Shown piece by piece: positions 26,013-64,000 of a stretch of 64,000 bases of DNA. The stretch is from positions 143,617 through 207,616 of IMG/VR virus record IMGVR_UViG_3300046171_000252. One strand, written 5' to 3'. Below the pieces are notes generated by a model. The model was not told the origin of the DNA. It ran no database searches and saw nothing but the letters and a program-made list of their open reading frames with translations. Each line of letters begins with the position of its first letter. Within the stretch, counting starts at the first letter, position 1. The position numbers and the translations under genes are program-made.

Positions 26013-26021
26013 GGAGTTCAA

Positions 26022-34078: not shown

Positions 34079-34081
34079 ATT

Positions 34082-41239: not shown

Positions 41240-41266
41240 TATATCTGCTATAATTAATAGGAAGCA

Positions 41267-41295
41267 AGGGGGGTCTTCGGATCCCCTCTTTTTTT
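41267..41295 (+). terminator. intrinsic terminator after psbA
   Basis: GGGGGGTC-TTCG-GATCCCCT + T-run. Confidence 0.85.
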
Positions 41296-41328
41296 ACTTA
41301 CAAATGTTAAGTTTAATTACTTATTCTC

Positions 41329-41592
41329 ATGAACGGAAAATTAGATCCAGAAGAAAGAATCTTGGATGATGTCTTACCAGAACCACCGAAATGGTTTTCT
41401 CAAACTTCTGACGAACCATATGATAGACATCACTATCGATTTGTGTATTCAGACGGTCAAAGTAAAATCTTTGAGAGTTATGAACGAGCACAACAAGAAT
41501 GGTTCAATCTTCCAACAGTATTCAAATCTCATATAGAAGTTTTGGATATTAAAAACAAAAAACAAAAAAATTTAAAAGGAGGTTTTAAATAG
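41329..41592 (+). CDS. hypothetical protein between psbA and psbD
   Basis: 87 aa, [11 protein letters not shown]; no nuclease motif. Confidence 0.65.
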
Positions 41593-48481: not shown

Positions 48482-48489
48482 TATAAATA
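48482..48489 (+). promoter_or_regulatory. T4-type late promoter of the fibre module
   Basis: TATAAATA 46 nt before 48536. Confidence 0.75.
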
Positions 48490-48535: not shown

Positions 48536-50762
48536 ATGGCAACACCTATTAGAATTAAAAGGTCAGCTGTTGCTGGCAAGAAACCTACTACCTCAGACTT
48601 ACAGTTAGGCGAATTAGCTGTAAACTTTAATGATGGTAAAGTATTTCTCAAACAGGATACTAGCGGTGTCGGTGTTGGCACAAGAATTGTAGAAGTTGGA
48701 GCAGGAACTACAACTTTTGCCGGTAAGACTTTATTCGTTACTGAGAATGGTAATGATGATAATGATGGACTGAATGAAGGCAATGCAAAAGCAACGATTA
48801 AATCTGCTGTTGCCGCTGCTTCTGAGGGAGATACGGTTAAAGTATTTCCAGGAACATATGTAGAAAATAACCCAATTAATTTACCGGATAATGTTTCCGT
48901 AGAGGGAACTGAACTTCGTCGTTGTGTTGTCACACCACAAAATGGCGGACAAGATTTATTTTATGTTAGTCAAGGATGCCATCTAACAGACCTGAGTTTT
49001 GTTGGTGCTGCCGCAACTAATAATTCTGCTGCTGTTTCTTTCAGACCACTTGCTGGAGTATCATCTGATAGATTCTTTGATGCTGCCAGACTCATCCGTG
49101 AGAATATTGAATTTATTGCAGATGAAACTATTGGATATCTTGAGAGCACTGACTATCAGAATCCTGCAATCAGTGTAGATAATGCTTCTTTCAGAACAAA
49201 CATCAACCACGCAATGCGTTCCACTTGCCACGACATTACAAGAGGTGGCAACTCTAAATCTATTGGTGCTGGTCAATCATACTTCACTGGTGATAGTTTA
49301 ACCTCTGGAATTGGTGCAACACATATTGCTGCTCTGGAGTATTCGGTTGGTATTGCCAGATCATGTATCAACAATATTGGATTCTCAAAAACAAGTGGCG
49401 GAAACTATCAGACAAACTATACTCAGGTCAAGGACTTAAGTATTCAGAGTGATGGTGCATCCTATGATATTGGTAATTGTGCCAATGTTCTTTCGGCAGT
49501 CACTGTCTGTGTCGGTATTGTAACTGGTATTATTCAGAATGGTATTAATGGAGTTGCAGCAGCCACAGGATTCACCACAAACTTCCCTGGCAATAGTGGA
49601 ACAATCAACTCTGGCATTCTGACCGCATCACTGAGTCCTTTACAGGGAACTGGTATTATTACCAAAGGTCCTTACGTTAGAAACTGCACTAACTTTATTC
49701 CTGATAGTATCGGAGCAAGAATAGATGGATTCAATGCTGATGAAGGAGACCAAATAAACAGAATTGGTGTTCAAGGTTCATTCAACGTTGATTCTTATAC
49801 TCAATATAATCAAGGTGGTATCGGAGTTTCGGTAAGTAACGGAGCATATTGTCAGTTAGTTTCGCTCTTCACCATCTGTAATGACATTGCAGTTTCTGCC
49901 AGTGGCGGTGGTCAGTTAGATTTAACTAACTCAAACTCATCTTTCGGATCTCGGGGTCTTATTGCATTTGGTAGATCTGATGAAACATCCAAGGGCATTG
50001 ATCGTTATACAGGAATCGTCACTTCAACTGCCGCAGTAAGTCAGAGTCAGATTGTTGTTAGTGGTGTTGGAAGTAATAGACCCTATGATGGTCAGGCAAT
50101 TTTCTTTGATAGAAAATATAATGTAGTCAGAAAGATTGATATTACGAATGGTGGGTCTGGATATACTTCGGCACCAACTGTGACGGTTGCTGCACCTACT
50201 GGACCCGGAGTTGCCGTTCGTGCAACTGCGAGCGCAACAGTTGAGAATGGTGTTGTTACTGCAGTCAGAATATTAAGTAATGGTTCACAATATGAAGTTG
50301 TTCCTGCCGTCACTTTCTCTGGGGGGTGGTGCAGATGCTGCTGCCACGGCAGTGCTTGATCCAATTTATTATGAAGTTTCCTCGTCAACTGAACCATCTG
50401 CCGGTATCTCAACACTTACTTTGGTTCAGAATCTAAATAATGAAGTTGGAGTTGGATCAACAGCATTCTTTGCCAGACAGAGTTTACAAATTGTAAGTTC
50501 GCATTCATTCCAATACATCGGTGCAGGAAACACTATTGAACTAGCATATCCATCTCAAGGCGGAGTTGTTATTCAAGATAATGAAGTAATTGAAACTGAT
50601 GGTGCAAGAGTTGTATACACGAGCACCGACCAATCTGGTAATTTCAGAATTGGTGATGGTGTTGAAATCAATCAATCAACCGGAACAATATCCGGAAGCA
50701 TTTATGTCAAGAGTTTATTCACACAAGTAACACCATTCATTCTTGCATTAGGAGGAGATTAA
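48536..50762 (+). CDS. tailspike/fibre with beta-helix (pectin-lyase-like) region (apparent +1 error in G6 at 50321)
   Basis: IRIKRS...GELAVN fibre N-terminus; FVTENGND...TIKSA...VFPGTY; second ORF continues GGGADAAAT in shifted frame. Confidence 0.75.
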
Positions 50763-51128: not shown

Positions 51129-54100
51129 ATGGCAGCACCAATTAGATTCCTTAGTGGAAGACAACAACAACAAAAAATTGGTATAGAAGGAAGTACTGAT
51201 AACCAAAAGGTATTAGAGGTTGTTGGTCAGGTTGGTATTGGCACAACAGTTTTTGAACCTTCCGTACAACTAGAAGTTCGCGGTGATGCATCAGTAAGTG
51301 GTGTTCTCACAGCAGGTAGTTTAAATATTACTGGAGATGGTGGTGTTCCTGCCAGTCTGACTGTTGAAACTTTAAATGCTACTGGTGTTTCTACATTTGG
51401 TGGTGCTGTTGATGTAAATGCCGGACTAGATGTAGATGGACAGTCTGATTTAGACGAATTGGTTGTTGCCGGTGTTGCAACCTTTAGTAATGCTGTAGAT
51501 ATTAATAGCACACTAGATGTAGATGGAGATACTCAATTAGATGATCTGAATGTTGCCGGTGTTTCCACATTCAGTTCTGTTGTCAATGCGACAGCTGCCG
51601 TCAATGCGACAGATATAATTAAAGGATACAAATATACTGCTGTTCCTTATGGAAGCACGGTTACACTTGCTGTCACTGTTGCAAGTAAGGATTCCACTCA
51701 CAGATATAATGGAACGGGAAGTGGAAATGGTTATGTAATTGATGGCATTCAGGCTCCATTTCTAACCCTAACACCTGGAAGAACATATAGATTCACGAAC
51801 AATAATACTGGGAGTCATCCTCTTAAGTTTTATCTTGAAGCAGATAAGACGACACTATATGAAACGAATGTTAATTTTCAGGATACATATACTGAAATAA
51901 CAGTAACTGATGAGACTCCAATAGTTCTCCATTATCAATGCACTGCTCATGGATACATGGGTAATGCGGTTCAGACAAATGCAAATGTTGTCAATACAAA
52001 CTATCCGGCAACAATTAGAAGCACCTTAGATGTTTCTGGTGTTTCAACCTTTACACAATTAGATGTCAGCACTGGTGGATTAGATGTTGATGGACTCACT
52101 AATTTAGATGAAGTCGTCGTTGCTGGTGTATCTACCTTTACTGGAAATATCGTTGCTGTTTCGGCAGAATTCAGTGGTAATGTAACGATTGCAGGAACCT
52201 TAACTGCGGAAGATAAGACCAATATAGATTCACTTGGAATTGTAACTGCAAGAACAGGAGTTAGAGTCGATGCTGGTGGTTTAATTGTAACTGCCGGTGT
52301 ATCTACATTCACTGATTCTGTAGACATTAATAATGGTGTTGGTGTAGTTGGTGGATTAACCGCAGATTCTTTAACTATCTCTGGAGTCACCACAGGAATT
52401 AATGCTGCCGGCATTTCATCATTCGTCAGAATAGATGTAGATGGTCAGGCTGATTTAGATGAACTGGTTGTTGCCGGTGTTGCTACATTCCAAGGTGCCG
52501 TTAATTTTGATGTTAATAGTGAAATTAATATTGGAACTGGCGTCACTATACTTGCTAATAACTTACATGTAACTGGTATTGTTTCTGCGGCACAGTTCAT
52601 CGGTGATGGTTCTGGTATTACGAATCTCCCTGGTATTAGTACCGTTGGTTCTTCATCTCTTACTGATGTTAATGTTTCTGGAACAACCACGACTGTTCAG
52701 TTAAGAGTCAGTGGTGTTGGAACTGCAGAAAAATTCTCTGTTAGTACAGGTGGATTTGACGTTGATGGTCAATCAGATCTTGATGAACTGGTTGTTGCCG
52801 GTGTATCAACCTTTAGTGCAAATACTTTTATCAATGCAGACCTTTCTGTCACCGGAGACATTGGTGCATCAGGAATCATTACTGCCACAGGAATTCAGTT
52901 AGTTGCCGGTAGTGGACTTGATGTTGGTGCCGTTGGTGTTCTGACTGCACTTTCAGTAGATGTCAGCACTGGTGGTATTGATGTAGATGGACAAGCAACC
53001 TTAGATGAAGTTGTAGTTGCTGGTGTTGCTACATTCAGTGCTCTTGCAGATGTTAATAATAGATTAGATGTTGCTGGTGGTGCTAATATTGATCAGTTAA
53101 ATGTTGCTGGTATTGCATCCTTCACTCAGTTAGATGTAAGCACTGGTGGTATTGATGTAGATGGACAGGCAACCTTAGATGAAGTTGTAGTTTCCGGTGC
53201 TTCAACATTTACTGGCACAGTTAAGATTGATGGAGCATTAGACATTGGTGTTGCCGGTGTTGATGTAGAGGGACTTACCAACTTAGATGAACTGATTGTT
53301 GCTGGTGTATCCACCTTTAGTAGCACTATTAATGGTAATGTAACTGGTAATCTAACTGGAACTGCATCAAATGCATCAGGTGCAACTGGAGACTTCTCAA
53401 TTGCAGATAAGATTGTTCATACTGGTGACACTAATACTGCTATCAGATTCCCTGCTGCCGATACATTCACTGTAGAGACTGGTGGTAGTGAAAGAGTTCG
53501 TGTAACTTCTGCCGGTAATGTTAATTTCTTAGGAAGTCTTGTTAATGTTAATGCGACTGGAGTTTCATCATTCGTCCAATTAGATGTTAGTACCGGTGGT
53601 TTAGATGTTGATGGACAAACTGATTTAGATGAACTTCAGGTTGCTGGTGTCTCCACATTCTCTGCCAAGGCAGTATTTAATACCGCATACCCATCCATAG
53701 ATGCCGACAATGAAATTCAAGTCGGCACTGCGATTCAACTGGGTAAAGCAGGTGTTATAACTGCAACATCATTCTCTGGTTCTGGTGCTAACCTGACTGG
53801 TATTGCCGCAACGGATCATGTATCCACATTTGACCTGGTTGTTGCCGGTGTCTCTACATTCGTTGGTTTTGCAACCTTTAGAGATGGATTACATGTTACT
53901 GGTGTATCTACCTTCGCTAATGCTGAATTCAATAATGTAACCACAGACTTCAATCTCACTGTTACAGGTTCAGCAGCTCTTAATGGACCTGTTACCCTAG
54001 GTTCGGATACATCAAATAGTATTCACTTCGGGGGTCGCGTTGACACTGGTATTACCCCTAAAGAAGATGATAAATACGATTTAGGTTCTTCCTCCTTGAA

Positions 54101-56594
54101 ATGGAAAGATCTTTATCTTGATGGGACTGCAAATATTGATGGACTAAATGTAACTGGTGTCTCTACATTCAATGATGATGTAAGAATACTTGCTGGTGGA
54201 TTAGATGTTACTGGTGTTGTTACTGCCACATCATTCTCTGGTTCTGGTGCAAACTTAACTGGTATTGGAACTCAAGCTACTAATGTTCAGGCACAATCAT
54301 TAACTGTTGCCGGTATTTCTACATTCAATAATGATGTAATCTTCAATAGTAGTGCAAACATTGTATTTGACAAGTCTGCTGATGCACTTGAGTTTGCGGA
54401 TACTGCAAAGGCAGTCTTTGGTGATAGTGATGACCTACAGATTTATCATAATAGTCATAGTTACATAGACCATGTAGGTGCAAATAACCTTCATATTAGA
54501 AATCAGACTGCTGACCAAGATATAACCATTCAGACTGATGATGGTTCTGGTAATCTTGCCACTTACTTCCAAGCTGAAGGTGCTAGTGGTAAAGCTTCAC
54601 TTCATTTCTACGGTGCTAAAAAACTTGCTACCAATACTGGTGGAATAGATGTTACTGGTGGCGTTAATGCAACTGGTGTCATAACTGCCACATCATTTGC
54701 TGGTGATGGTTCTGCACTGACCGGTATTGCCGCAACGGCCCATGTATCCACATTTGACCTAGTTGTTGCCGGTATATCCACATTCAATGATGATGTAAGA
54801 ATTACTGCTGGTGGCATTAATGCTGCAGGTGTTGTAACTGCCACCTCATTCTCTGGTTCTGGTGCAAACTTAACTAGTGTTGATGCCGCCACTCTGGATG
54901 GTGTTGACTCTACTTCCTTCCTTCGCAGTGATGCTGCTGACATTAAGACCTCTGGTAATCTAACATTTAATGATAATATTAAAGCTAGATTTGGTACTAG
55001 TAGTGACCTTGAGATTTACCATAATGGTACTGACTCTCACATCTCGAACACTAACGGTACTTTATACATCGATCAGGGCGTTGATGACACTGAGCTCGTT
55101 CTGAGATGCGACAATGGTTCTGGTGGATTAACGCAGTATATCCAATTGAATGGCGGTAATGGTGAAGTAAGACTTTATCATAACACTGGAGGTTTTGATG
55201 CAAAATTATCAACCAAATCTAGTGGAATAGATGTTAATGGTGGCGTTAATGCAACTGGTGTTATAACTGCCACATCATTCTCTGGTTCTGGTGCTAACCT
55301 GACTGGTATTGGAACGCAAGCTACTAATGTTCAGGCACAATCATTAACTGTTGCCGGTGTATCTACATTCAATGATGATGTAAGAATTACTGCTGGTGGT
55401 ATTAATGTTAGTGGTGTTTCAACATTCTCTGGAATTGCGACTCACATTGATACTTTACATGGACAAACATTAAAGATTGCCGGTGTTTCTACATTCCATG
55501 ATGCGGTTACAATAACAAAAGCATTAAATGCTTTAAATGTTAATGTTTTAACCACAAATCCCGCTATTAACATACAAAGAGATGGAACTACAAAAGGAAG
55601 TATTACGCCAGCATATGGTGAGTTTAGAGTACAAACAAGCAGTTCTGAAGATTTAGCACTTCAAGTAAATTCTTCTGGTGGAACTACTGGTGAAATATTT
55701 TTGAAGAGCAGTTCTCGCGAAATTCTTAAGGCGAGTCATAATGGTGGAGTTGCAGTTTCTGGAATTATTACCGCAACGGCAATTAATGTAGTTGCAGGTA
55801 GTGGACTAGATGCTGGTAATACTGGTGTTATTACTGCCACATCATTTGTTGGTGATGGTTCTGCACTGACCGGTATTGCTGCTGGTGGATCAGGAGAGTT
55901 TAATACTGGAATTACAAGTTCTAGGCAAATTGTTCCACTATCTTTTGAGTCAACGGTATTTACTTTCCCATCAACAGCAGGTAAACAATATGTAATTGAG
56001 TCTATTAATGTTGCGAATGTTGATGAGTCTGTTGGTGTCGGAACAACAGTTAATATTATCGCATCAATTCAGGATGCAACAGCAGGAGAACAAACTTATA
56101 TTGCTTATAATGTTCCTATCGTAACTGGTGGTTTGATTGAATTACTTAAGAATCCAATTGTTGCCGGTCCATCGGATGTAATTAGGATGTGGTCTACAAA
56201 TGATGCATATGTCGGAGTCAATAATGCCGCAGATGTTTATATGAATTTCACCGAACATAGTGATAGTACTGACTTTATTAGTAAGTTTGCCTCTACCGCA
56301 TCCGTTACTAGTACTGATACAACCACCCTATATACATCAACTTCTAATCCAACTGTAATTGAAAAAATTGGACTTGCAAATAGAACCGATATTGGTGATT
56401 TCCCAATTTCTATTAAAATTACAAACGGAACATCAACATCTTATCTTGCCAAAGATTTAATCATACCAAGATACTCTACTGTGGATATATTGGATAGACA
56501 AAAGAGAATTGAGACTGGTGCTAAAATTGAAGTTGAGGTTGGATCAACATCAACAATTGATATTATTATTGCCGGTAAGAAAATAACATCCTGA
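51129..56594 (+). CDS. long tail fibre-like protein (1821 aa)
   Basis: dozens of LxVAGVSTF / GVITATSFSGSG shaft repeats with inserted globular domains. Confidence 0.85.
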   Translation: MAAPIRFLSGRQQQQKIGIEGSTDNQKVLEVVGQVGIGTTVFEPSVQLEVRGDASVSGVLTAGSLNITGDGGVPASLTVETLNATGVSTFGGAVDVNAGLDVDGQSDLDELVVAGVATFSNAVDINSTLDVDGDTQLDDLNVAGVSTFSSVVNATAAVNATDIIKGYKYTAVPYGSTVTLAVTVASKDSTHRYNGTGSGNGYVIDGIQAPFLTLTPGRTYRFTNNNTGSHPLKFYLEADKTTLYETNVNFQDTYTEITVTDETPIVLHYQCTAHGYMGNAVQTNANVVNTNYPATIRSTLDVSGVSTFTQLDVSTGGLDVDGLTNLDEVVVAGVSTFTGNIVAVSAEFSGNVTIAGTLTAEDKTNIDSLGIVTARTGVRVDAGGLIVTAGVSTFTDSVDINNGVGVVGGLTADSLTISGVTTGINAAGISSFVRIDVDGQADLDELVVAGVATFQGAVNFDVNSEINIGTGVTILANNLHVTGIVSAAQFIGDGSGITNLPGISTVGSSSLTDVNVSGTTTTVQLRVSGVGTAEKFSVSTGGFDVDGQSDLDELVVAGVSTFSANTFINADLSVTGDIGASGIITATGIQLVAGSGLDVGAVGVLTALSVDVSTGGIDVDGQATLDEVVVAGVATFSALADVNNRLDVAGGANIDQLNVAGIASFTQLDVSTGGIDVDGQATLDEVVVSGASTFTGTVKIDGALDIGVAGVDVEGLTNLDELIVAGVSTFSSTINGNVTGNLTGTASNASGATGDFSIADKIVHTGDTNTAIRFPAADTFTVETGGSERVRVTSAGNVNFLGSLVNVNATGVSSFVQLDVSTGGLDVDGQTDLDELQVAGVSTFSAKAVFNTAYPSIDADNEIQVGTAIQLGKAGVITATSFSGSGANLTGIAATDHVSTFDLVVAGVSTFVGFATFRDGLHVTGVSTFANAEFNNVTTDFNLTVTGSAALNGPVTLGSDTSNSIHFGGRVDTGITPKEDDKYDLGSSSLKWKDLYLDGTANIDGLNVTGVSTFNDDVRILAGGLDVTGVVTATSFSGSGANLTGIGTQATNVQAQSLTVAGISTFNNDVIFNSSANIVFDKSADALEFADTAKAVFGDSDDLQIYHNSHSYIDHVGANNLHIRNQTADQDITIQTDDGSGNLATYFQAEGASGKASLHFYGAKKLATNTGGIDVTGGVNATGVITATSFAGDGSALTGIAATAHVSTFDLVVAGISTFNDDVRITAGGINAAGVVTATSFSGSGANLTSVDAATLDGVDSTSFLRSDAADIKTSGNLTFNDNIKARFGTSSDLEIYHNGTDSHISNTNGTLYIDQGVDDTELVLRCDNGSGGLTQYIQLNGGNGEVRLYHNTGGFDAKLSTKSSGIDVNGGVNATGVITATSFSGSGANLTGIGTQATNVQAQSLTVAGVSTFNDDVRITAGGINVSGVSTFSGIATHIDTLHGQTLKIAGVSTFHDAVTITKALNALNVNVLTTNPAINIQRDGTTKGSITPAYGEFRVQTSSSEDLALQVNSSGGTTGEIFLKSSSREILKASHNGGVAVSGIITATAINVVAGSGLDAGNTGVITATSFVGDGSALTGIAAGGSGEFNTGITSSRQIVPLSFESTVFTFPSTAGKQYVIESINVANVDESVGVGTTVNIIASIQDATAGEQTYIAYNVPIVTGGLIELLKNPIVAGPSDVIRMWSTNDAYVGVNNAADVYMNFTEHSDSTDFISKFASTASVTSTDTTTLYTSTSNPTVIEKIGLANRTDIGDFPISIKITNGTSTSYLAKDLIIPRYSTVDILDRQKRIETGAKIEVEVGSTSTIDIIIAGKKITS

Positions 56595-56606: not shown

Positions 56607-59600
56607 ATGGGAATAAGAAATGATGTATTTGGTTTAGAGCAGATTTACCAACTGCAGATAGAAGGGCAATGGTCCACGAAAGGAGATGTCTGGTTAACTC
56701 CGAGTCCTTTTGGTGCTCAGGCTCCTTTTGGTTACTTTAGTGGTGGTTCTAGTAATAGATCAGTAGTACAACGTATTGATTATTCTAATGATACAGCAAC
56801 GGCATCGGTAAGAGGGCCATTAAGTGCTGGTAGATATAATCATGCAGCAACAGGTAATGCTAATTTTGGATACCATAGTGGTGGTAGTCCTGCAAAATCA
56901 ACAGTAGAACGTATTGATTATGGTAATGATACTGCCACGTCATCACCAAAAGGGCCATTAAGTGCTGGTAGAAGAAACTTATCGGCAACAGGTAATGCTT
57001 CTTTTGGTTACTTTGGTGGTGGTAGTCCTGCTCCAAAAACAACAATAGATCGTATTGATTATTCTAATGACACCGCAACGGCAGCAGTCAAAGGACCATT
57101 AAGTTCTGCTAGATATTGGTCAGCGGCAGCAGGTAATGCTTCATTTGGTTACTTTGGTGGTGGATATATTGATAATACTCCTACAAAATCAACAGTAGAC
57201 CGTATTGATTATTCTAATGACACCGCAACAGCAGCAGTAAAAGGACCATTAAGTGTTGCTAGATATCGACTGGCAGCAACAGGCAATTCTTCTTTTGGAT
57301 ACTTTGGTGGTGGCAATGGTCCATTATCATCAGTAGACCGTATTGATTATAGTAATGACACCGCAACGGCAGCAGCAAAAGGACCATTGAGTGCTGCTAG
57401 ATATTCTATAGCAGCAACAGGTAATGCTTCCTTTGGATACTTTAGTGGTGGTTATGATAAAACATTAGTAGACCGTATTGATTATTCTAATGATACTGCA
57501 ACAGCAGCAGTCAAAGGACCGTTAAATTATGACTATATTAAAACTGCGGCATCAAGTCCTAAGGCAAATGCAGTCACAGGTTTAACAGTACTCTCAGCAT
57601 CATCACCAGCAAGAGAAAATGTAGTCCCACAAGGAACTGACTTTGGTTACTTTGGTGGTGGACGTAATCCAGCTGGATCTGGTACTGTATCAACAGTAAA
57701 CCGTATTGATTACTCAAATGATACAGCAACTGCATCAACAAAAGGACCATTAAGTAGTGCTAGATATAATGTTGCAGCAATAGGTAATGCTCCATTTGGA
57801 TACTTTGCTGGTGGTAATCCTTCAAGTGCAGTATCCACAGTAGACCGTATTGATTACTCTAATGACACCGCAACAGCAGCAGTCAAAGGACCATTAAGTG
57901 CTACTAGTGATGGTGCTGCTACTGTAGGCAATTCTGATTTTGGTTATTTTGCTGCTGCTGGTAATAAATCAACAGTAGACCGTATTGATTATACTAATGA
58001 CTCTGCAACGGCATTAGTCAGAGGACCATTAAGTTATTCAAGTTATGGTAGGGCAGGAACAGGTAATGCTGATTTTGGATATATTGGTGGAGGTGGTCCT
58101 ACATTATCAACAGTAAATCGTATTGATTATTCTAATGATACGGCAACGGCATCACCTAAAGGACCATTAAGTCTTGCTAGACGTACTATGGGAGCAACAG
58201 GTAATAGTTCTTTCGGATACTTTGGTGGTGCTTTCCCCGGTCCATATTCAACAGTAGACCGTATTGATTACTCCAATGATACTGCCACGGCATCAGTAAA
58301 AGGACCACTAAGTTCTGCTAGAGGTCAATTTGTAGCAACAGGTAATGCTTCCTTTGGTTACTTTGGTGGTGGATATGATGATAATCCCAATCAAACATCA
58401 ACAGTAGACCGTGTTGATTATTCTAATGACACCGCAACGGCAGTAGTCAAAGGACCATTAAGTGAAAAGATTCAGAACCATGCAGCATCAAGTTCCAGAG
58501 CAAATGCAATACCACTCAAAGGACCTGGTAGCTTAGAAGTTCCAATATCATTGGGTGCTTTTAGTCGTAATTTTGGACCACAAGGAACTGACTTTGGATA
58601 CTTTGGTGGTGGTGGTCCTGCTCCAAAATCAACAATAAACCGTATTGATTATTCTAATGACATGGCAACGACAGCAGTCAAAGGACCATTAGATGTTGCT
58701 AGAGCTTACTTAGCAGCAACCGGTAATCAAAACTTTGGTTACTTTGGTGGTAGTGTTGGTCCAAAATCATCAGTAGAACGTATTGATTATACTAATGATA
58801 CTGTAGAAGCATCACCAAAAGGACCATTGAGTGTTGCTAGATATTCTTTGGCAGCAACAAGTAATTCTTCCTTTGGTTACTTTGGTGGTGGAGGTCCTGG
58901 CCCATTCTCAACAGTAGATCGTATTGATTATTCTAATGATACTGCAACGGCATCAGTCAAAGGACCATTGAGTGTTGCTAGACATGGTTTGGCAGCAACA
59001 AGTAATTCTTCCTTTGGTTACTTTGGTGGAGGTATGCCTGGTAGTATTTCAACAGTAGATCGTATTGATTATTCAAATGATACCGGAACAACACCAACAA
59101 AAGGACCATTGAGTGCTGCTAGAAGATACTTGGGAGCAACGGGTAATGCCGACTTCGGTTACTTTGGTGGTGGAGGTCCTGGTAGTATTTCAACAGTAGA
59201 TCGTATTGATTATACTAATGATACTGCAACGGCATCAGTCAAAGGACCATTGAGTTATGGTAGAGATAACATAGCAGCAACGGGTAATGCTAATTTTGGT
59301 TATTTTGCTGCTGGTCCTAGTCCCAGTGCTGCATTATCAACAGTAGACCGTGTTGATTACTCTAATGACACCGCAACAGCATCAGTAAGAGGACCATTAA
59401 GTGTTAATAACTATGCTATGGGAGCAACAAGTTCCAGAGCCAATGGAATTCCGACTGAAAATATTGTAAATTATGCGGCAGGAACTCTAGGGACTCCTAA
59501 CACCGGTTACTTTGGTGGTGGTGAACCCGGATACATATCATTTGTAGAACGTATTGATTACTCTAATGACTCCGCATCGCCAGTAACAAAAGGACCATTA

Positions 59601-61376
59601 AGTGCTGGTAAATCTTTTATGGGAGCAACAAGTAGTGGTTCCTTTGGTTACTTTGGTGGTGGTTATGCAACATCAATTGGTAATCAATCAACAGTAGACC
59701 GTATTAGTTACCTAAACGATACTACAACGGCAGTAGTAAAAGGTCCATTGACTGGTGTTAAAGATGAATTAACAGCAACAGGCAATGCTTCCTTTGGATA
59801 CTTTGGTGGTGGACAATTGAATGGTTCTACTACACAAACAACAATAGACCGTGTTGATTTTTCTAATGATAGTGCCAATGCCGTAGCAAAAGGACCATTA
59901 AGTGTTGCTAGATATGGTTTGGCAGCAACCGGTAATCAAAACTTTGGTTACTTTGGTGGTGGTGGTCCTGGTTTTAAAAGCACAGTAGATCGTATTGATT
60001 ATTCCAATGATACGGCAAATGCATCACCAAAAGGGCCATTAAGTGCTGGTAGATATCGACTTGCAGCAACAGGTAATGCTTCCTTTGGTTATTTTGGTGG
60101 TGGTCGTAAATCACCTGGTGCGACAGTAGTATCAACAGTAGACCGTATTGATTATTCGAGTGATACTGAAACGGCAGTAGTAAAATCACCATTGCTTGTT
60201 GTTAAATTTGCTCATGCAGCAACTGGTAGTGCTGACTTTGGTTACTTCGGTGGTGGTGCTCCTGGACCATTATCAACAATAGACCGTATTGATTATTCTA
60301 ATGACACCGCAGCATTATCGGCAAAAGCGCCATTTACTTCTGGAAATGGTTATAGGAAGGAATTAACAGCAACAAGTGCCAGAGCAAACGGATTCGGTCA
60401 AATATCGGGTCAAATATTAGGTCCAGCACTGGTTTCTAATGCCGATGCAGTCGCAGGGTCATTTAATCCAACAACGTTTGGTTACTTTGGTGGTGGTCGC
60501 ACTACTCCTTCTGATATGTCAACAGTAGACCGTATTGATTACTCCAATGATACTGCCACGGCATCAGTCAAAGGACCATTAAGTCTTGCTAGAAAGCAAC
60601 TAGGTGCAGTAGGAAATTCATTTTTTGGATATTTTACGGGTGGTGAAACTCCTTCTGTAGTATCAAATGTAGACCGTATTGATTACTCCAATGACACCGC
60701 AACGGCAGTAGAAAAAGGACCATTAAGTGCTCCTAGAAGATATGGTGCCAATGCCGGTAATTCTGATCATGGATATTGGGTTGGTGGACTTACTCCTGGT
60801 ACTACATTAGCATCATTAGTAGATCGTATTGATTACTCTAATGACACTCCAACGACATTAGAAAGAGGACCATTGAGTCTTGCTAGAGCTATTCTAAGTG
60901 GAACTGGCAATGCTGACTTTGGTTACTTTGGTGGTGGTAATGTTCCTTCTCCTAGTGTCACATACTCTACAGTAGACCGTATTGATTATGCTAATGACAC
61001 TGCAACGGCAGTAGCAAAAGGACCATTAAGTGTTGGTAAATATGGTTCAGCAGCAACAGGTAATGCTTCATTTGGTTACTTTGCTGGTGGTTATACTCCT
61101 AGTGATCTTTCATCAGTAGATCGTATTGATTATTCTAACGACACCGCAACAGCATCACCAAAAGGACCATTGAGTCTTGCCAGAGATCAATTGGGAGCAA
61201 CAGGTAATGCTTCATTTGGTTACTTTGCTGCTGGTGCTACTTCTAGTGCAGTAACAACAGTAGACCGCATTGATTACTCTAATGACACTGCAACAGCACC
61301 GGCAAAAGGACCACTAAGTGTTGGTAGATGGACTCTAGCAGGAACCTCAGCAGCAGCAAATGCACTTCCACAATAG
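56607..61376 (+). CDS. Kelch-like multi-beta-propeller protein (1589 aa, 30 repeats)
   Basis: ~46-aa repeat GYFGGG-x-STVDRIDYSNDTATAxxKGPLSxxRxxxAATGN in five blocks of six. Confidence 0.85.
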   Translation: MGIRNDVFGLEQIYQLQIEGQWSTKGDVWLTPSPFGAQAPFGYFSGGSSNRSVVQRIDYSNDTATASVRGPLSAGRYNHAATGNANFGYHSGGSPAKSTVERIDYGNDTATSSPKGPLSAGRRNLSATGNASFGYFGGGSPAPKTTIDRIDYSNDTATAAVKGPLSSARYWSAAAGNASFGYFGGGYIDNTPTKSTVDRIDYSNDTATAAVKGPLSVARYRLAATGNSSFGYFGGGNGPLSSVDRIDYSNDTATAAAKGPLSAARYSIAATGNASFGYFSGGYDKTLVDRIDYSNDTATAAVKGPLNYDYIKTAASSPKANAVTGLTVLSASSPARENVVPQGTDFGYFGGGRNPAGSGTVSTVNRIDYSNDTATASTKGPLSSARYNVAAIGNAPFGYFAGGNPSSAVSTVDRIDYSNDTATAAVKGPLSATSDGAATVGNSDFGYFAAAGNKSTVDRIDYTNDSATALVRGPLSYSSYGRAGTGNADFGYIGGGGPTLSTVNRIDYSNDTATASPKGPLSLARRTMGATGNSSFGYFGGAFPGPYSTVDRIDYSNDTATASVKGPLSSARGQFVATGNASFGYFGGGYDDNPNQTSTVDRVDYSNDTATAVVKGPLSEKIQNHAASSSRANAIPLKGPGSLEVPISLGAFSRNFGPQGTDFGYFGGGGPAPKSTINRIDYSNDMATTAVKGPLDVARAYLAATGNQNFGYFGGSVGPKSSVERIDYTNDTVEASPKGPLSVARYSLAATSNSSFGYFGGGGPGPFSTVDRIDYSNDTATASVKGPLSVARHGLAATSNSSFGYFGGGMPGSISTVDRIDYSNDTGTTPTKGPLSAARRYLGATGNADFGYFGGGGPGSISTVDRIDYTNDTATASVKGPLSYGRDNIAATGNANFGYFAAGPSPSAALSTVDRVDYSNDTATASVRGPLSVNNYAMGATSSRANGIPTENIVNYAAGTLGTPNTGYFGGGEPGYISFVERIDYSNDSASPVTKGPLSAGKSFMGATSSGSFGYFGGGYATSIGNQSTVDRISYLNDTTTAVVKGPLTGVKDELTATGNASFGYFGGGQLNGSTTQTTIDRVDFSNDSANAVAKGPLSVARYGLAATGNQNFGYFGGGGPGFKSTVDRIDYSNDTANASPKGPLSAGRYRLAATGNASFGYFGGGRKSPGATVVSTVDRIDYSSDTETAVVKSPLLVVKFAHAATGSADFGYFGGGAPGPLSTIDRIDYSNDTAALSAKAPFTSGNGYRKELTATSARANGFGQISGQILGPALVSNADAVAGSFNPTTFGYFGGGRTTPSDMSTVDRIDYSNDTATASVKGPLSLARKQLGAVGNSFFGYFTGGETPSVVSNVDRIDYSNDTATAVEKGPLSAPRRYGANAGNSDHGYWVGGLTPGTTLASLVDRIDYSNDTPTTLERGPLSLARAILSGTGNADFGYFGGGNVPSPSVTYSTVDRIDYANDTATAVAKGPLSVGKYGSAATGNASFGYFAGGYTPSDLSSVDRIDYSNDTATASPKGPLSLARDQLGATGNASFGYFAAGATSSAVTTVDRIDYSNDTATAPAKGPLSVGRWTLAGTSAAANALPQ

Positions 61377-61410
61377 TATGCTATAATAAACAAAAGATTG
61401 ATTATATGAT

Positions 61411-62064
61411 ATGGGTATAATGATCGCACTCCCCTGTCACGGGGGAATTGTGAATGAAAAGACAACTATGAGTTTGTTTAATCTAGGCAAACTCTTAGTA
61501 AGAAATAATATTCCGCACGGTCTTCTCACTCAGGCAAACTCTTCCTTGATTACTCATGGAAGGTCTAAGTGTGCTAACTTTTTTATCAACAATACAGATC
61601 ATGAATATTTGTTTTTCCTTGATAGTGATATTGGATTTAATCCAGAAGATGTGCTAAGATTACTGAGTCATAATGAAAACATTGTTTCTGGCACATATCC
61701 AATGAAGACAATACCCATTCGGTATTGTGCTGATGTTCTTCAACCAGAAGAACGCAAGGGTGATTTACTCAAGGTTGGTGGAAATGGTATGGGATTTGTG
61801 ATGATTCATCGCAATGTCTTTGCCAATATCGCACAGAAGTTTCCATATCTTAAATACATACCATCAACTAAAGATAGTAATTATCCACCAACAGAAGCAG
61901 AGATGAATAACTCATATCATTACTTTGCAGAAGAAAAGATTGATGACAGTTTTGCATCAGAGGATAAAAGTTTCTTTTATCGTGCTAGAATGTCGGGGTA
62001 TACTCATTGGCTAGATACTACAATCAAATTACAACACGTCGGTTCACACGTCTTTACTGAATAA
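61411..62064 (+). CDS. GT-A fold glycosyltransferase-like
   Basis: IALPCHGG, FFLDSDIGF, GMGFVMIHR, SEDKSFF, LQHVG. Confidence 0.75.
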   Translation: MGIMIALPCHGGIVNEKTTMSLFNLGKLLVRNNIPHGLLTQANSSLITHGRSKCANFFINNTDHEYLFFLDSDIGFNPEDVLRLLSHNENIVSGTYPMKTIPIRYCADVLQPEERKGDLLKVGGNGMGFVMIHRNVFANIAQKFPYLKYIPSTKDSNYPPTEAEMNNSYHYFAEEKIDDSFASEDKSFFYRARMSGYTHWLDTTIKLQHVGSHVFTE

Positions 62065-62066
62065 TT

Positions 62067-63821
62067 ATGAAATCTGGTTCAACCGAAACTGCATATCATT
62101 TCCTTGCAGAACATTATCAATTTCCTGAAGATATTGAAGTAACTCATTTTCCAGAGGAACTGAAAAAATCTGACAAAAAATATAAAATTCTCTGGGCACA
62201 TCATGCATATGATCAACCAGTGTTTATTAATTTTGACCATAAAACAGTAGATCATATTGTTACGCCATCACACTGGGCAAAAGAAAATATTGTTAAATAT
62301 CACAATGTTCCGAAGGATAAAGTTACAGTAATTCCAACAGGTGTTTCTGACAAATTTACTTTCTCAGAAAATAAAACAAAAACTTTTATTCATACTTCTG
62401 TTCCTTATAAAGGTTTAGAATTAATGCCTGAAATTATTAGGAGAATTCATCAGAAACATCCAGATGCAAAGTTTAAAATCTTTTCATCAATGTCATTATA
62501 TGGTCAACAGAATGATCCTTATATTGAATTATATGAGGAGTTGAAGAAACTTCCTAATGTAGAATACTCTGCGGCAGTCGATCAAGAAGAATTGATTGAG
62601 TGCTATCAAGAATCTGCATTTTTTATTCATCCAAATATTTGGGAGGAAGTTTTCTGTGTTTCTATGGCAGAGGCAATGAAATGTGGTACATATCCAATTA
62701 TCACAAATATAGGAGCACTCTCCGAAGTTGCCGGTGATAACTTTGCTTCGGTTGTTCCTATTGATGGAACCCGAACACCCGCAAAATATGAAGTTACTGA
62801 AACCTTTCTAAATACATTTGCAGAGATTTGCTGTACTGCTTTAGATTATTTTGAGGGAGACAGAACATATTATAACCAAATCTCAAAATCTCTTTCTAAT
62901 CATATTTCACAGAAGTGTGACTGGAAAAAAATTGCACACCAGTGGAAAAAACTGATTACTAAAATTACAAGTGGAGAACCCATGACTACAGAAAACACTG
63001 AACTGTCTTATAATCCCGTCACTTCTGAGCAGGCAGTGATGGATGATGAATATCTTCAGCAAGCATTTGCCAATGTTCTGAGATGGGAAGATAGTGATAA
63101 GGAACTTGCACAGGGCAGAACTAATTTCCAGTTAGAAAAGTTTGCACTTCTTGATACTCATACCCTTCCTGTTGCCTTTGAGAACACTCTGAAGTCTCGT
63201 CGTCAGATGGCAGAGGGTTATATGTACAAACTCATTGAGATGAAAGAAAAGGTCCGTGAGTTTGACTTTAAGTGGGCAGATAAGGATAAAGCACAACCAA
63301 TTTTTTGGGAAGAAGGTGGACCCGGTGGTGGTTCCAAGAAACTGTGTTGGTTTGATTTAGATGAACTTACACTGTCTCATTATCTGAAGTCTTCTGAACT
63401 TGAGATTCGTGATCGTCTTCACCAGATGCAACATCTAGATAAGATTCTTGATAAATTGATGGAAAAGAATGATGGCAAACCAGTCACCCGAGAACAATTC
63501 CTTGATGCTGATGGGCAGTATTGGGAAAGAAGATTTGCCGATCAGGCTATGGATGAAATGATCGCGGCACAAACTGGCATCTCTATTGGTAACCTACACA
63601 GTATGCGTCGTGCTTCTGCACCTGCAATTGTTGATAAGAGAAATGAACTGCCAGAAGGTTATATGCCTCTGAATAAGATTCTTGAAAGTCCTCAAGGTAA
63701 GATGGACTTCCTGAATGATCTGCAGAAGAAAGTTCTCACAGGTATCCAAGAAGTTACTGGTGAAAATCTTGGTATGATTTCCGGTTCTCCAGAAGAGGAG
63801 CAAAAGAAACTCCAAGGTTGA
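62067..63821 (+). CDS. GT4-like glycosyltransferase fused to helical C-terminal domain
   Basis: HPNIWEEVFCVSMAEAMKCG...IGALSEV GT-B motif; helical second half from M at 62982. Confidence 0.8.
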   Translation: MKSGSTETAYHFLAEHYQFPEDIEVTHFPEELKKSDKKYKILWAHHAYDQPVFINFDHKTVDHIVTPSHWAKENIVKYHNVPKDKVTVIPTGVSDKFTFSENKTKTFIHTSVPYKGLELMPEIIRRIHQKHPDAKFKIFSSMSLYGQQNDPYIELYEELKKLPNVEYSAAVDQEELIECYQESAFFIHPNIWEEVFCVSMAEAMKCGTYPIITNIGALSEVAGDNFASVVPIDGTRTPAKYEVTETFLNTFAEICCTALDYFEGDRTYYNQISKSLSNHISQKCDWKKIAHQWKKLITKITSGEPMTTENTELSYNPVTSEQAVMDDEYLQQAFANVLRWEDSDKELAQGRTNFQLEKFALLDTHTLPVAFENTLKSRRQMAEGYMYKLIEMKEKVREFDFKWADKDKAQPIFWEEGGPGGGSKKLCWFDLDELTLSHYLKSSELEIRDRLHQMQHLDKILDKLMEKNDGKPVTREQFLDADGQYWERRFADQAMDEMIAAQTGISIGNLHSMRRASAPAIVDKRNELPEGYMPLNKILESPQGKMDFLNDLQKKVLTGIQEVTGENLGMISGSPEEEQKKLQG

Positions 63822-63822
63822 T

Positions 63823-64000
63823 ATGAACCAGAAGATTATTGTTGCTGATGACTTTTATGATATGGCACATCCATATTATAAAGGCATCGTAGAAGGTGAA
63901 CCAATTTTTACTGATGAAGCACCCCAGAAAATTTCACATCTTCTGGGTCGTGAGATAAAAGTAGAGAACTTATTTAATGAAGTTGCTTCATCCAATACTC
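63823..64000 (+). CDS. partial ORF, possible DUF6445/2OG-Fe(II)-like protein
   Basis: MNQKIIVADDFYD N-terminus; runs off window. Confidence 0.45.
   Translation, partial: MNQKIIVADDFYDMAHPYYKGIVEGEPIFTDEAPQKISHLLGREIKVENLFNEVASSNT

What the first reader, a model, noticed from the sequence alone, without database searches (positions are those of the whole stretch)
61411..64000. Second glycosylation module welded to the fibre operon
A GT-A enzyme, a GT4-like enzyme and a probable oxygenase-like gene follow the propeller gene with very short spacers, separate from the main island. Hypothesis for an undescribed system: the 21-kb island supplies donors (heptose, deoxy-sugars) and this module installs them on fibres/propellers as a virion glycan coat.
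Basis: inference. Interest (0 to 1): 0.6.

Follow-up and report, generated by a model that had tools for sequence, protein, structure and literature searches.

The report
Glycosyltransferase pair inside cyanophage propeller-fibre cluster
Two sugar-adding enzymes and a degenerate oxygenase-like protein sit in a conserved marine cyanophage gene cluster that alternates giant Kelch-propeller proteins with tailoring enzymes, so the enzymes probably decorate those proteins, but no sugar on a virion has been shown.

Summary
Three co-directional ORFs follow the 1,589-aa repeat gene with spacers of 34, 2 and 1 nt:
- a 217-aa GT-A enzyme related to STIV A197, with an invariant DxD motif;
- a 584-aa protein made of a GT4 domain (EX7E present) fused to a 281-aa helical domain with no convincing known fold;
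- a short DUF6445 paralog that has lost the HxD motif. It runs off the window and continues at the genome start, because the record's two ends overlap by 814 nt.

The module is a slice of a larger cluster of about 30 kb. The genome is a T4-like cyanomyovirus near S-SKS1. Three ~1,580-aa proteins, each about five six-bladed Kelch propellers, alternate with GT-A, GT4, two DUF6445 proteins, a sulfotransferase, a P4H-like oxygenase and a carbamoyltransferase. In 48 IMG/VR loci that carry the helical domain, GT4 (48), Kelch (47), GT-A (45), DUF6445 (45) and sulfotransferase (43) co-occur.

The genome lacks lipid-carrier glycan machinery and a ThyA/gp42-family gene (the family of T4 dCMP hydroxymethylase). 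Decoration of the propeller proteins is therefore the best reading (about 0.4), ahead of host-surface remodelling (about 0.3).

The apparent N-D-T sequon is only the Kelch structural turn. The heptose-donor premise was not confirmed.

The parts
48482..48489 (+). T4-type late-promoter-like TATAAATA, 46 nt upstream of the first fibre gene. The next exact copy on this strand lies about 30 kb downstream, at genome position 14159.
   Evidence: The count of 6 in the window is not above chance (4.65 expected), so only its position is suggestive.
48536..50762 (+). Tail-fibre gene read as two overlapping ORFs (607 aa and 160 aa). They match successive parts of phrog_17885. The frame changes near a G6 run at 50321-50326.
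51129..56594 (+). Tail-fibre / baseplate-wedge-like protein, 1,821 aa (phrog_30742, E 1e-61).
56607..61376 (+). Kelch-repeat protein R1, 1,589 aa. It has a conserved N-terminal segment of about 35 aa and about 30 blades of about 47 aa. Linkers with an S-x-x-A-N-A-x-P-like motif group the blades into about five six-bladed propellers (phrog_19111).
   Evidence: Kelch homology of the paralog R3
61377..61410 (+). 34-nt spacer between R1 and the GT-A gene, the longest gap in the 16-ORF run.
61411..62064 (+). 217-aa GT-A-type glycosyltransferase (A197-like; phrog_1574). DxD at D71/D73, E184-D185 and H209 are invariant across distant phage homologs. No transmembrane segment.
62067..62975 (+). GT4 (Glycos_transf_1) catalytic part of the 584-aa protein, residues 1-303. 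EX7E motif at E194-E202. It is the only PF00534 match in the genome.
62976..63821 (+). C-terminal helical domain of the 584-aa protein, residues 304-584. It is a separate gene in S-SKS1 and in the L002-type relatives. Confident model, no convincing known fold. Its central helix / beta-hairpin / helix resembles prefoldin beta only weakly.
63823..64000 (+). 5' part of the 177-aa short DUF6445 paralog, which continues at genome 637-1170. A-N-L stands where the long paralogs have H-V-D.
63187..64000 (.). 814 nt that repeat the first 814 nt of the genome record with 6 mismatches. This is an end overlap of a circular or circularly permuted assembly.

Best explanation
The finding is a real slice of a conserved gene cluster in T4-like cyanomyoviruses of the S-SKS1 (Llyrvirus) lineage. 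The cluster is probably transcribed late. It starts at the fibre genes (48536) and runs through the record's end to about 14.2 kb of the genome start. Sixteen co-directional ORFs lie 34 nt or less apart. Three ~1,580-aa proteins, each about five six-bladed Kelch propellers, alternate with soluble tailoring enzymes: an A197-like GT-A, a GT4 fused to a helical domain of unknown fold, two DUF6445 proteins (the one in the window lacks the metal motif), a sulfotransferase, a P4H-type 2OG oxygenase and a carbamoyltransferase. The most likely mechanism is inferred, not shown. In the cytoplasm the GT4 and GT-A build a short glycan directly on the co-encoded propeller proteins, or on neighbouring fibres. 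The fused helical domain would act as a docking or holdase part that brings the GT4 to its substrate. The sulfo-, carbamoyl- and hydroxylating enzymes would then finish the decoration before the proteins join the virion. Shown: gene anatomy, family assignments, catalytic motifs, conserved linkage, and absence of the searched lipid-carrier and ThyA/gp42-family genes. Inferred: the acceptor, the order of reactions, the role of the helical domain, and virion location of the propeller proteins.
For: Anatomy and families. The genome is a T4-like cyanophage near S-SKS1. GT-A: profile hit to A197 at E 1.1e-7, with DxD, ED and H invariant down to 25% identity. GT4: 64 bits and EX7E present. The neighbours are Kelch propellers: designed Kelch SAKe6FR E 7.4e-10, KLHL12 E 2.8e-6. 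Linkage: the alternating order recurs in L002-L005 and in AG-345-L05, in a different order in the latter. All 8 of 8 IMG/VR loci with a GT-A at 56% identity or more also hold GT4, the helical domain and Kelch ORFs; 0 of 72 loci with distant GT-A homologs do. Of 48 helical-domain loci with at least 5 kb on both sides, 48 have GT4 (35 fused), 47 Kelch, 45 GT-A, 45 DUF6445, 43 sulfotransferase and 43 P4H-like. GT4 is the recurrent fusion partner of the helical domain down to 41% identity. Kelch genes occur only in this cluster of the genome, and the module's GT4 is the genome's only one. No phage-encoded PGT, WecA-type transferase, Wzx or Wzy/ligase. No transmembrane segments in the three proteins. 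A late-promoter-like motif sits before the fibre gene, with no other exact copy on the + strand for about 30 kb. Contigs from four RNA libraries cover the module and bridge the GT-A/GT4 and GT4/DUF6445 junctions. Precedent: Iyer et al. 2010 predicted hydroxylation then sulfation of co-encoded tail-collar and collagen-like proteins (PMC2938197). Glycans on mycobacteriophage capsid and tail-tube proteins are reported, as cited in PMC12619734.
Against: No direct evidence of glycan on any protein. Gene neighbourhood alone does not name an acceptor. The conserved N-D-T, G-P and D-Y of the repeats align with the ordinary Kelch signature (Y-D-P-x-T-x-x-W and P-M-x-x-x-R), and the Asn is replaced in AG-345-L05, so there is no sequon evidence. 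S-SKS1 keeps the Kelch genes, the helical domain and a sulfotransferase but gave no hit to either GT. One metatranscriptome contig joint skips exactly the two GT genes (weak). The GTs are therefore dispensable for propeller function. Distant GT-A homologs sit in replication or early modules in Cr30 and in a Manatee Springs phage. Virion location of the Kelch proteins is assumed from context. RNA-library contigs may derive from DNA and cannot show one transcript. The TATAAATA count is not above chance. The co-occurrence loci are the 80 best matches and include near-duplicate populations, so they are not independent. Published work reads such cyanophage and pelagiphage GT genes as host cell-wall modification (PMC7029224, PMC12801897).
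Confidence: 0.4

Rival explanations
1. Host-surface remodelling. The GT-A, GT4, sulfotransferase and carbamoyltransferase alter host lipopolysaccharide or another envelope glycan during infection, for example to block superinfection or stop progeny re-adsorbing. They use host lipid-carrier machinery. They sit in the host-recognition region only because that region is a hot spot for gene gain.
For: This is the published reading for glycosyltransferases in the host-recognition clusters of pelagimyophages and cyanomyophages and for cyanophage 'LPS / cell-wall' islands (PMC7029224; PMC12801897; PMC3037559). Sulfo- and carbamoyltransferases of these families typically act on sugars (NodH, NodU/NolO; my own knowledge). 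The GT pair is optional. The same genome carries a 20-kb island of sugar-nucleotide enzymes and at least seven GT families.
Against: The genome encodes none of the four lipid-carrier families searched: priming phosphoglycosyl transferase (PF02397), WecA-type transferase (PF00953), Wzx flippase (PF01943) and Wzy/ligase (PF04932). A hot-spot explanation does not predict the strict linkage of the orthologous GT-A, GT4 and helical domain to Kelch genes across relatives, nor its survival through rearrangement. It also does not predict the tight packing behind fibre genes or the repeated fusion of GT4 to a domain that stays with the Kelch genes even where the GTs are absent.
Confidence: 0.3
2. The enzymes make or modify another product. 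Candidates are a soluble or secreted glycoconjugate or secondary metabolite, or a different virion or host protein (capsid, other fibres). The Kelch proteins would then be sugar-binding receptor-binding proteins rather than substrates.
For: Cyanophage arrays of dioxygenases have been proposed to serve secondary-metabolite synthesis (PMC2938197). Beta-propellers often bind ligands (my own knowledge). The acceptor is unknown.
Against: No peptide-synthetase, polyketide or transporter genes turned up among the cluster ORFs scanned. The cluster consists only of giant structural-type proteins and tailoring enzymes. The linkage to Kelch genes remains unexplained unless they take part.
Confidence: 0.2
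3. DNA modification. The glycosyltransferases glycosylate hydroxymethylated bases in phage DNA, as in T4 and other phages.
For: The genome is T4-like. Distant homologs of the GT-A lie in replication or early modules of Cr30 and a Manatee Springs phage. Virus GTs that hypermodify DNA are known (Pyle et al. 2024, as cited in PMC12619734). This reading has been suggested for another cyanophage (PMC12801897).
Against: No thymidylate-synthase / dCMP-hydroxymethylase family (PF00303) match in the complete genome. The genes sit among fibre-type genes, not replication genes. Their strict partners are Kelch proteins, a sulfotransferase and protein-type oxygenases.
Confidence: 0.04

Closest known systems
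Mycobacteriophage virion glycosylation (Freeman et al. 2023, known to me through citations in PMC12619734 and PMC12801897; the paper itself is not held)
   Same: Phage-encoded glycosyltransferases lie beside structural genes, and the idea is a glycan coat on virion proteins.
   Different: There, glycans were detected on the C-termini of capsid and tail-tube subunits. Here nothing has been detected. The presumed acceptors are giant Kelch-propeller proteins, the host is a marine cyanobacterium, and extra sulfo-, carbamoyl- and oxygenase genes are present. Homology to those GTs was not tested.
STIV A197 and chlorovirus-type virus-encoded cytoplasmic protein glycosylation (background from my own knowledge)
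   Same: The 217-aa protein family is detectably homologous to A197, a solved viral GT-A enzyme (E 1.1e-7). The glycosylation toolkit is soluble and virus-encoded, with no lipid-carrier genes.
   Different: The match covers only residues 25-142. A197's own acceptor is not established. Chlorovirus enzymes act on the major capsid protein of a eukaryotic virus.
Serine-rich-repeat adhesin glycosylation by GtfA/GtfB in Gram-positive bacteria (my own knowledge)
   Same: This is a working analogy. A GT4-family enzyme pairs with a non-catalytic substrate-binding partner, starts glycosylation of a huge repetitive surface protein in the cytoplasm, and further GTs extend the glycan.
   Different: There is no sequence relationship between the helical domain and GtfB. 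The acceptors are Kelch propellers, not Ser-rich repeats. The analogy is untested.
Bacterial operons of 2OG dioxygenases and sulfotransferases with tail-collar or collagen-like proteins (Iyer, Abhiman, de Souza, Aravind 2010, PMC2938197)
   Same: Dioxygenase and sulfotransferase genes are co-encoded with phage-tail-type structural proteins. Those authors predicted hydroxylation followed by sulfation of these proteins. The distant helical-domain loci seen here include an APS kinase, echoing their PAPS synthetases.
   Different: That prediction is also untested. It involves no glycosyltransferases and no Kelch propellers, and it concerns mostly cellular operons.
Cyanophage and pelagiphage 'LPS / cell-wall modification' glycosyltransferase islands (PMC3037559, PMC7029224, PMC12801897)
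   Same: Marine T4-like phages carry many GTs and sugar-nucleotide enzymes, some within the host-recognition region.
   Different: Those islands are read as host-surface modification and are not described as interleaved with specific structural genes. The present module is locked to Kelch-propeller genes and a dedicated helical domain.
T4 alpha/beta-glucosyltransferases and other DNA-glycosylating phage GTs
   Same: Glycosyltransferases in a T4-like phage.
   Different: No PF00303-family (ThyA/dCMP hydroxymethylase) gene in the genome. The Pfam families and the gene context differ.

Membership tests
GT-A fold glycosyltransferase (A197-like / GT2-like) | Sequence homology to a solved GT-A enzyme | tested here: met
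   A profile of 12 family members hits STIV A197 (2c0n) at E 1.1e-7 over residues 25-142. The single sequence gives E 0.0018.
GT-A fold glycosyltransferase (A197-like / GT2-like) | DxD metal and nucleotide-sugar motif | tested here: met
   D71-S-D73 is invariant in homologs down to 25% identity. E184-D185 and H209 are also invariant.
GT-A fold glycosyltransferase (A197-like / GT2-like) | Pfam Glycos_transf_2 (PF00535) gathering score | tested here: not met
   14.9 bits against a cut-off of 23.3 (E 0.027), covering only the DxD region. It should therefore be called GT-A/A197-like, not a Pfam GT2 member.
GT-A fold glycosyltransferase (A197-like / GT2-like) | Three-dimensional GT-A fold; donor and acceptor | not tested
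Activity cannot be tested with these tools.
GT4 (Glycos_transf_1, retaining GT-B) | Pfam PF00534 above the gathering score | tested here: met
   64.0 bits against 26.4 (E 1.6e-17). PF13692 and PF13439 are also above their cut-offs. Six-frame genome search gives 66.5 bits.
GT4 (Glycos_transf_1, retaining GT-B) | EX7E motif in the C-terminal Rossmann domain | tested here: met
   E194-x7-E202. E193, E194 and E202 are nearly invariant in alignment A2.
GT4 (Glycos_transf_1, retaining GT-B) | Complete two-Rossmann GT-B architecture | tested here: inconclusive
   The N-domain model PF13439 matches only its last ~65 positions (residues 27-94). The full-length AF2 model was unusable (pLDDT 42.9).
DUF6445 / 2OG-Fe(II) oxygenase-like | Family membership by sequence | tested here: met
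   PF20043 scores 23.9 bits against a cut-off of 24, which is borderline. The protein is 30% identical (E 3e-22) to the neighbouring 205-aa paralog, which scores 46.8 bits.
DUF6445 / 2OG-Fe(II) oxygenase-like | HxD/E...H iron-binding triad | tested here: not met
   Where the four long paralogs have H-V-D, the window's protein has A-N-L. Its counterparts in relatives have A-N-T, H-L-E or H-L-S. A distal W-H-S is kept. A catalytic oxygenase role for this copy is doubtful. No PDB sequence match exists for the family profile.
Kelch beta-propeller (the neighbouring 'propeller' genes) | Homology to solved six-bladed Kelch domains and the Kelch blade signature | tested here: met
   The 321-aa member matches SAKe6FR at E 7.4e-10 (residues 45-314) and KLHL12 at E 2.8e-6. 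The blade period is about 47 aa, with a GG doublet and Y..T and R positions aligned.
Phage virion-glycosylation system | Glycosyltransferase genes embedded among structural genes | tested here: met
Phage virion-glycosylation system | Glycan demonstrated on a virion protein | not testable with these tools
   Needs virion glycoproteomics.
Phage DNA glycosylation (T4-type) | Enzyme that makes the hydroxymethylated base (ThyA/gp42 family) | tested here: not met
   No PF00303 match in the 100%-complete genome. The control rings in 10 of 14 reference genomes.
Lipid-carrier-dependent O-antigen / polysaccharide pathway encoded by the phage | Priming transferase, flippase, polymerase/ligase | tested here: not met
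   No PF02397, PF00953, PF01943 or PF04932 match. The host could still supply them.

The most novel reading that the evidence does not exclude
Abundant marine T4-like cyanophages carry a dedicated, self-contained system that glycosylates, sulfates and carbamoylates giant multi-propeller Kelch fibres on the virion. A previously undescribed helical, prefoldin-like docking domain would deliver the GT4 to its protein substrate. This would be the first virion glycan coat shown for a cyanophage, or for any phage of a Gram-negative-type host, and a new class of enzyme-targeting domain.
Probability: 0.3. Interest if true: 0.8.

Novelty: new variant of a known kind. Interest (0 to 1): 0.55.

Why it matters
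If the enzymes decorate virion propeller proteins, some of the ocean's commonest cyanophages wear a self-made, sulfated or carbamoylated glycan coat. Relatives of these genes occur in hundreds of marine and freshwater metagenome clusters.

- Such a coat would bear on host recognition, adsorption to particles or grazers, virion stability and escape from host defences.
- It would overturn the default annotation of cyanophage glycosyltransferases as 'LPS / host cell-wall' genes.
- It would give a first function to the cluster's oxygenase genes (the DUF6445 pair and the P4H-type enzyme), members of the 2OG-oxygenase families that are numerous and unexplained in cyanophages.
- It would define a new protein domain, the 281-aa helical module.

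Even if the acceptor proves to be the host surface, the strict coupling to Kelch-propeller genes is a concrete handle that can be tested.

Tried and rejected
1. N-glycosylation sequon idea. Each blade carries N-D-T, and N-x-S/T is enriched (47 observed against 19 ± 4 in shuffles of R1). I rejected it as evidence. The motif aligns with the ordinary Kelch Y-D-P-x-T-x-x-W turn, and the Asn is replaced by Thr in AG-345-L05. The same applies to G-P as a hydroxylation site and D-Y as a sulfation site.
2. Structure of the whole 584-aa protein from 11 close homologs: pLDDT 42.9, unusable.
3. Fold of the helical domain. The model is good (pLDDT 90.2), but there is no significant match:
   - Foldseek PDB best E 0.29.
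   - The prefoldin-beta match covers only about 105 residues.
   - VIA-align best Z 6.8, within the background for helical hairpins.
   - BFVD returns only the S-SKS1 orthologue.
   - The ESM Atlas gave nothing.
It was not run.
5. PDB profile search for DUF6445: no hit.
6. Late-promoter counting: TATAAATA is not enriched in the window. Sigma-70-like and terminator-like sites are at or below chance.
7. Co-transcription from public RNA libraries. Only assembled contigs were available. They show presence and bridging of two gene junctions, but not a single transcript or its timing.
8. Heptose premise: no GmhA-type SIS_2 match.
9. DNA-modification reading: no PF00303 match.
10. The paper by Freeman et al. 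2023 is not held.
Full report
**What is there**

The window is the last 64 kb of a single-contig virus record of 207,616 bp, 100% complete by CheckV. Its last 814 nt (window 63187-64000) repeat its first 814 nt with six mismatches. The record is therefore a circular or circularly permuted assembly, and genes cut by the window's end continue at the genome start (locus L001).

The core genes are about 80% identical in DNA to Synechococcus phage S-SKS1 (Llyrvirus) and about 70% to other T4-like cyanomyoviruses. The closest public record for the finding itself is the uncultured 'Marine virus AG-345-L05': 68% DNA identity, 59-65% protein identity.

**The three genes**

All three ORFs lie on the + strand, after the 1,589-aa repeat gene (56607-61376), with spacers of 34, 2 and 1 nt.

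- **61411-62064, 217 aa, GT-A type.**
  - Pfam GT2 is below threshold (E 0.027).
  - A profile of twelve family members hits the solved viral GT-A enzyme A197 of STIV at E 1.1e-7.
  - The DxD (D71, D73), E184-D185 and H209 are invariant in phage homologs down to 25% identity.
- **62067-63821, 584 aa, two parts.**
  - Residues 1-303 are a GT4 enzyme: PF00534 64 bits against a cut-off of 26.4, EX7E at E194-E202. It is the only GT4 in the genome.
  - Residues 304-584 are a separate domain. It is a stand-alone gene in S-SKS1 (39.5% identity) and in the L002-type relatives (63% identity). In those relatives the GT4 carries a different C-terminal half instead.
  - A search of 1.84 billion representatives found only 88 clusters with this domain. 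Most are stand-alone proteins of 250-340 aa. The recurrent fusion partner, down to 41% identity, is GT4.
  - With 33 diverse sequences AlphaFold gives a confident model (pLDDT 90.2, pTM 0.81): mostly helices around a long helix / beta-hairpin / helix element.
  - No library match is convincing. Foldseek PDB best E is 0.29. Prefoldin beta matches about 105 residues (TM 0.76 on the target, VIA Z 6.8), which is within the background for helical hairpins. BFVD returns only the S-SKS1 orthologue.
- **63823 onward, 177 aa, continuing at genome 637-1170.**
  - It is a short paralog (30% identity, E 3e-22) of a clear DUF6445 protein encoded 5 kb further on.
  - Where the long paralogs have H-V-D it has A-N-L. 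It is oxygenase-like by descent but probably not an active iron enzyme.

None of the three proteins has a transmembrane segment.

**The surroundings change the picture**

Reading across the record's end gives this order:

| Order | Gene product |
|---|---|
| 1 | tail fibre (48536-50762, split by a frameshift) |
| 2 | 113-aa ORF |
| 3 | 1,821-aa fibre |
| 4 | Kelch protein R1 |
| 5 | GT-A |
| 6 | GT4 + helical domain |
| 7 | short DUF6445 |
| 8 | Kelch protein R2 (1,568 aa) |
| 9 | long DUF6445 |
| 10 | sulfotransferase (split) |
| 11 | Kelch protein R3/R4 (321 + 1,271 aa, one gene broken by a frameshift) |
| 12 | P4H-type 2OG oxygenase |
| 13 | carbamoyltransferase |

These are sixteen co-directional ORFs with gaps of 34 nt or less. 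A T4-type late-promoter motif lies 46 nt before the first fibre gene, and the next exact copy is just after the carbamoyltransferase gene. The motif count is not above chance, so this is only suggestive.

The repeat proteins are Kelch beta-propellers. The 321-aa member matches a designed six-bladed Kelch protein at E 7.4e-10 and KLHL12 at E 2.8e-6. The blades have a period of about 47 aa, and linker motifs group them into about five propellers per protein. Kelch genes occur nowhere else in the genome. Among 50,697 phage records they are found only in S-SKS1 and AG-345-L05.

**Conservation**

The alternating arrangement recurs in metagenome contigs at 70-77% GT-A identity (L002-L005). It also recurs in AG-345-L05, in a permuted order.

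In IMG/VR, the 80 best loci holding a relative of the GT-A split cleanly:

| GT-A identity | Loci | With GT4, helical domain and Kelch ORFs within 10 kb |
|---|---|---|
| 56% or more | 8 | 8 |
| 27-37% | 72 | 0 |

Of 48 loci that hold the helical domain with at least 5 kb on both sides:

| Partner within 10 kb | Loci out of 48 |
|---|---|
| GT4 | 48 (fused in 35) |
| Kelch ORFs | 47 |
| GT-A | 45 |
| DUF6445 | 45 |
| sulfotransferase | 43 |
| P4H-like oxygenase | 43 |

These loci are the best matches and include near-duplicate populations, so the counts overstate independence.

S-SKS1 has the Kelch genes, the helical-domain gene and a sulfotransferase, but gave no hit to either glycosyltransferase. 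One metatranscriptome contig joins 61403 to 63821, skipping exactly the two GT genes (short flank, weak). The GT pair is thus an optional cassette within a more constant propeller / tailoring-enzyme cluster.

**Which acceptor?**

Three readings compete.

- **DNA glycosylation is unlikely.** The genome has no ThyA / dCMP-hydroxymethylase family gene, and the context is structural.
- **Host-surface remodelling is the published default** for cyanophage and pelagiphage glycosyltransferases (PMC7029224, PMC12801897, PMC3037559) and cannot be excluded. However, the phage encodes no priming transferase, WecA-type enzyme, flippase or polymerase/ligase. A hot-spot explanation also does not predict the tight, rearrangement-resistant linkage to Kelch genes, or the repeated fusion of GT4 to a domain that stays with those genes.
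- **Protein decoration fits best.** The linkage, the soluble enzymes and the placement behind fibre genes all point to cytoplasmic decoration of the co-encoded propeller proteins. The helical domain is a candidate docking or holdase part. The precedents for this reading:
  - A comparable prediction, hydroxylation then sulfation of co-encoded tail-collar or collagen-like proteins, was made for bacterial operons in 2010 (PMC2938197).
  - Virion glycosylation is established for mycobacteriophages (cited in PMC12619734).
  - A197-like GT-A enzymes occur in another virus whose capsid protein is glycosylated (my own knowledge).

I put this reading at about 0.4, host remodelling at about 0.3, another product or acceptor at about 0.2, and DNA at about 0.04.

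**What does not count as evidence**

The striking N-D-T in every blade is not a sequon signal. It aligns with the canonical Kelch Y-D-P-x-T-x-x-W turn, the G-P-L-S-x-A-R with the Kelch P-M-x-x-x-R, and the Asn is not conserved in AG-345-L05.

RNA-library contigs from four runs in three studies cover the module and bridge the GT-A/GT4 and GT4/DUF6445 junctions. They are assemblies that may include DNA, and they cannot show a single transcript or its timing.

**The link to the 21-kb island**

The island (19796-39467) holds the following:

- three epimerase/dehydratases;
- a UDP-glucose / GDP-mannose dehydrogenase;
- a GHMP kinase and a cytidylyltransferase-like protein;
- methyltransferases;
- glycosyltransferases of families GT2, GT11 (two), GT17, GT25 and GT92, plus DUF5672.

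It therefore has its own transferases and is not merely a donor factory. I found no GmhA-type isomerase in the genome, so the heptose premise is unconfirmed. Whether the island and the module act on the same acceptor is open.

**Limits**

- The full-length fold of the 584-aa protein failed.
- The GT-A and a propeller unit were not folded.

**Verdict**

This is a new variant of a known kind, virus-encoded tailoring of structural proteins. Its architecture is conserved and previously undescribed, and it contains a domain of unknown fold. The proposed function is still inferred.

Noticed in passing
window 63187-64000 and genome 1-814 (L001:1-814): The record's two ends overlap by 814 nt with 6 mismatches. 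IMG/VR classes the record as linear with no end repeats. The overlap duplicates the 3' part of the GT4-helical gene and the start of the DUF6445 gene.
   Followed up: yes
window 50280-50360 (G6 run at 50321-50326); L001:8270-8277; L001:6517-7349: Three genes of the cluster are split by frameshifts. The 607/160-aa tail fibre splits at a G6 run. The third Kelch gene splits at a 4-nt CAGT duplication that occurs once, against 7 normal copies of the same codon context. The sulfotransferase is split into 180 + 112 aa, whereas relatives have an intact gene of 265-275 aa. These may be assembly errors or real pseudogenes.
   Followed up: partly
window 40154-42658: psbA appears as three ORF fragments (phrog_182 positions 3-78, 242-359 and 141-349), with G+C rising to 45%. 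S-SKS1 has two psbA copies flanking endonuclease genes. Possible duplication, intron or homing-endonuclease disruption.
   Followed up: no
window 61403 -> 63821 (RNA run X18): One metatranscriptome contig joins the spacer just before the GT-A start to the stop codon of the GT4 gene, skipping exactly the two glycosyltransferase genes (2,417 nt). The flank is short (24 nt), so this is weak, but it fits a presence/absence cassette.
   Followed up: partly
proteins P0228, P0235, P0236: 800-aa relatives also carry an FkbM-type methyltransferase domain (PF05050) alongside the GT4 and helical-domain regions, which hints at O-methylation of the same product. The order of the domains was not examined.
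   Followed up: no
L002:10659-13262: In this relative the GT4 domain is fused to a different C-terminal half with a GT2-like E-D-T-D motif, and the helical domain is a separate 291-aa gene directly downstream. Domains are shuffled within the same operon position.
   Followed up: partly
contigs holding P0283: A distant helical-domain homolog (28% identity) lies directly downstream of an 842-aa ORF. Further upstream on the same contig are an APS-kinase gene and a Gly_transf_sug glycosyltransferase. This suggests a wider association of the domain with sulfation and glycosylation genes beside large proteins.
   Followed up: no
L009:6986-10533 (Synechococcus phage ACG-2014f_Syn7803C8): A distant GT-A homolog (26% identity) follows tail-collar fibre genes. 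It precedes a '26-residue repeat surface protein', another glycosyltransferase and a nucleotide-sugar epimerase: a similar theme with a different repeat protein.
   Followed up: no
L015:2289-7921 (Pelagibacter phage HTVC027P): The nearest cultured-phage homolog of the GT4 domain outside the lineage (27% identity) lies between tail / tail-collar genes and a 1,342-aa structural protein, near a 2OG-Fe(II) oxygenase gene.
   Followed up: no
window 19796-39467 and whole genome: The sugar island carries families more typical of eukaryote-like or LOS glycosylation (GT11 x2, GT17, GT92, GT25). No GmhA-type SIS_2 isomerase was detected, so a complete heptose pathway is not evident.
   Followed up: partly
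N-termini of window 56607-61376, L001:1163-5869, L001:7336-8301 and relatives: All Kelch-repeat proteins, including those of AG-345-L05 and S-SKS1, begin with a conserved segment of about 35 aa: R-G-x-F-x-L ... W ... D-V-W-x-T-P-S-P-like in the window's genome and its closer relatives, looser (V/I-W only) in AG-345-L05 and S-SKS1. Those of the window's genome and several relatives end with an A-A-N-x-L-P-like tail (not AG-345-L05 or S-SKS1). The N-terminal segment could be a virion-attachment or enzyme-recognition element.
   Followed up: no
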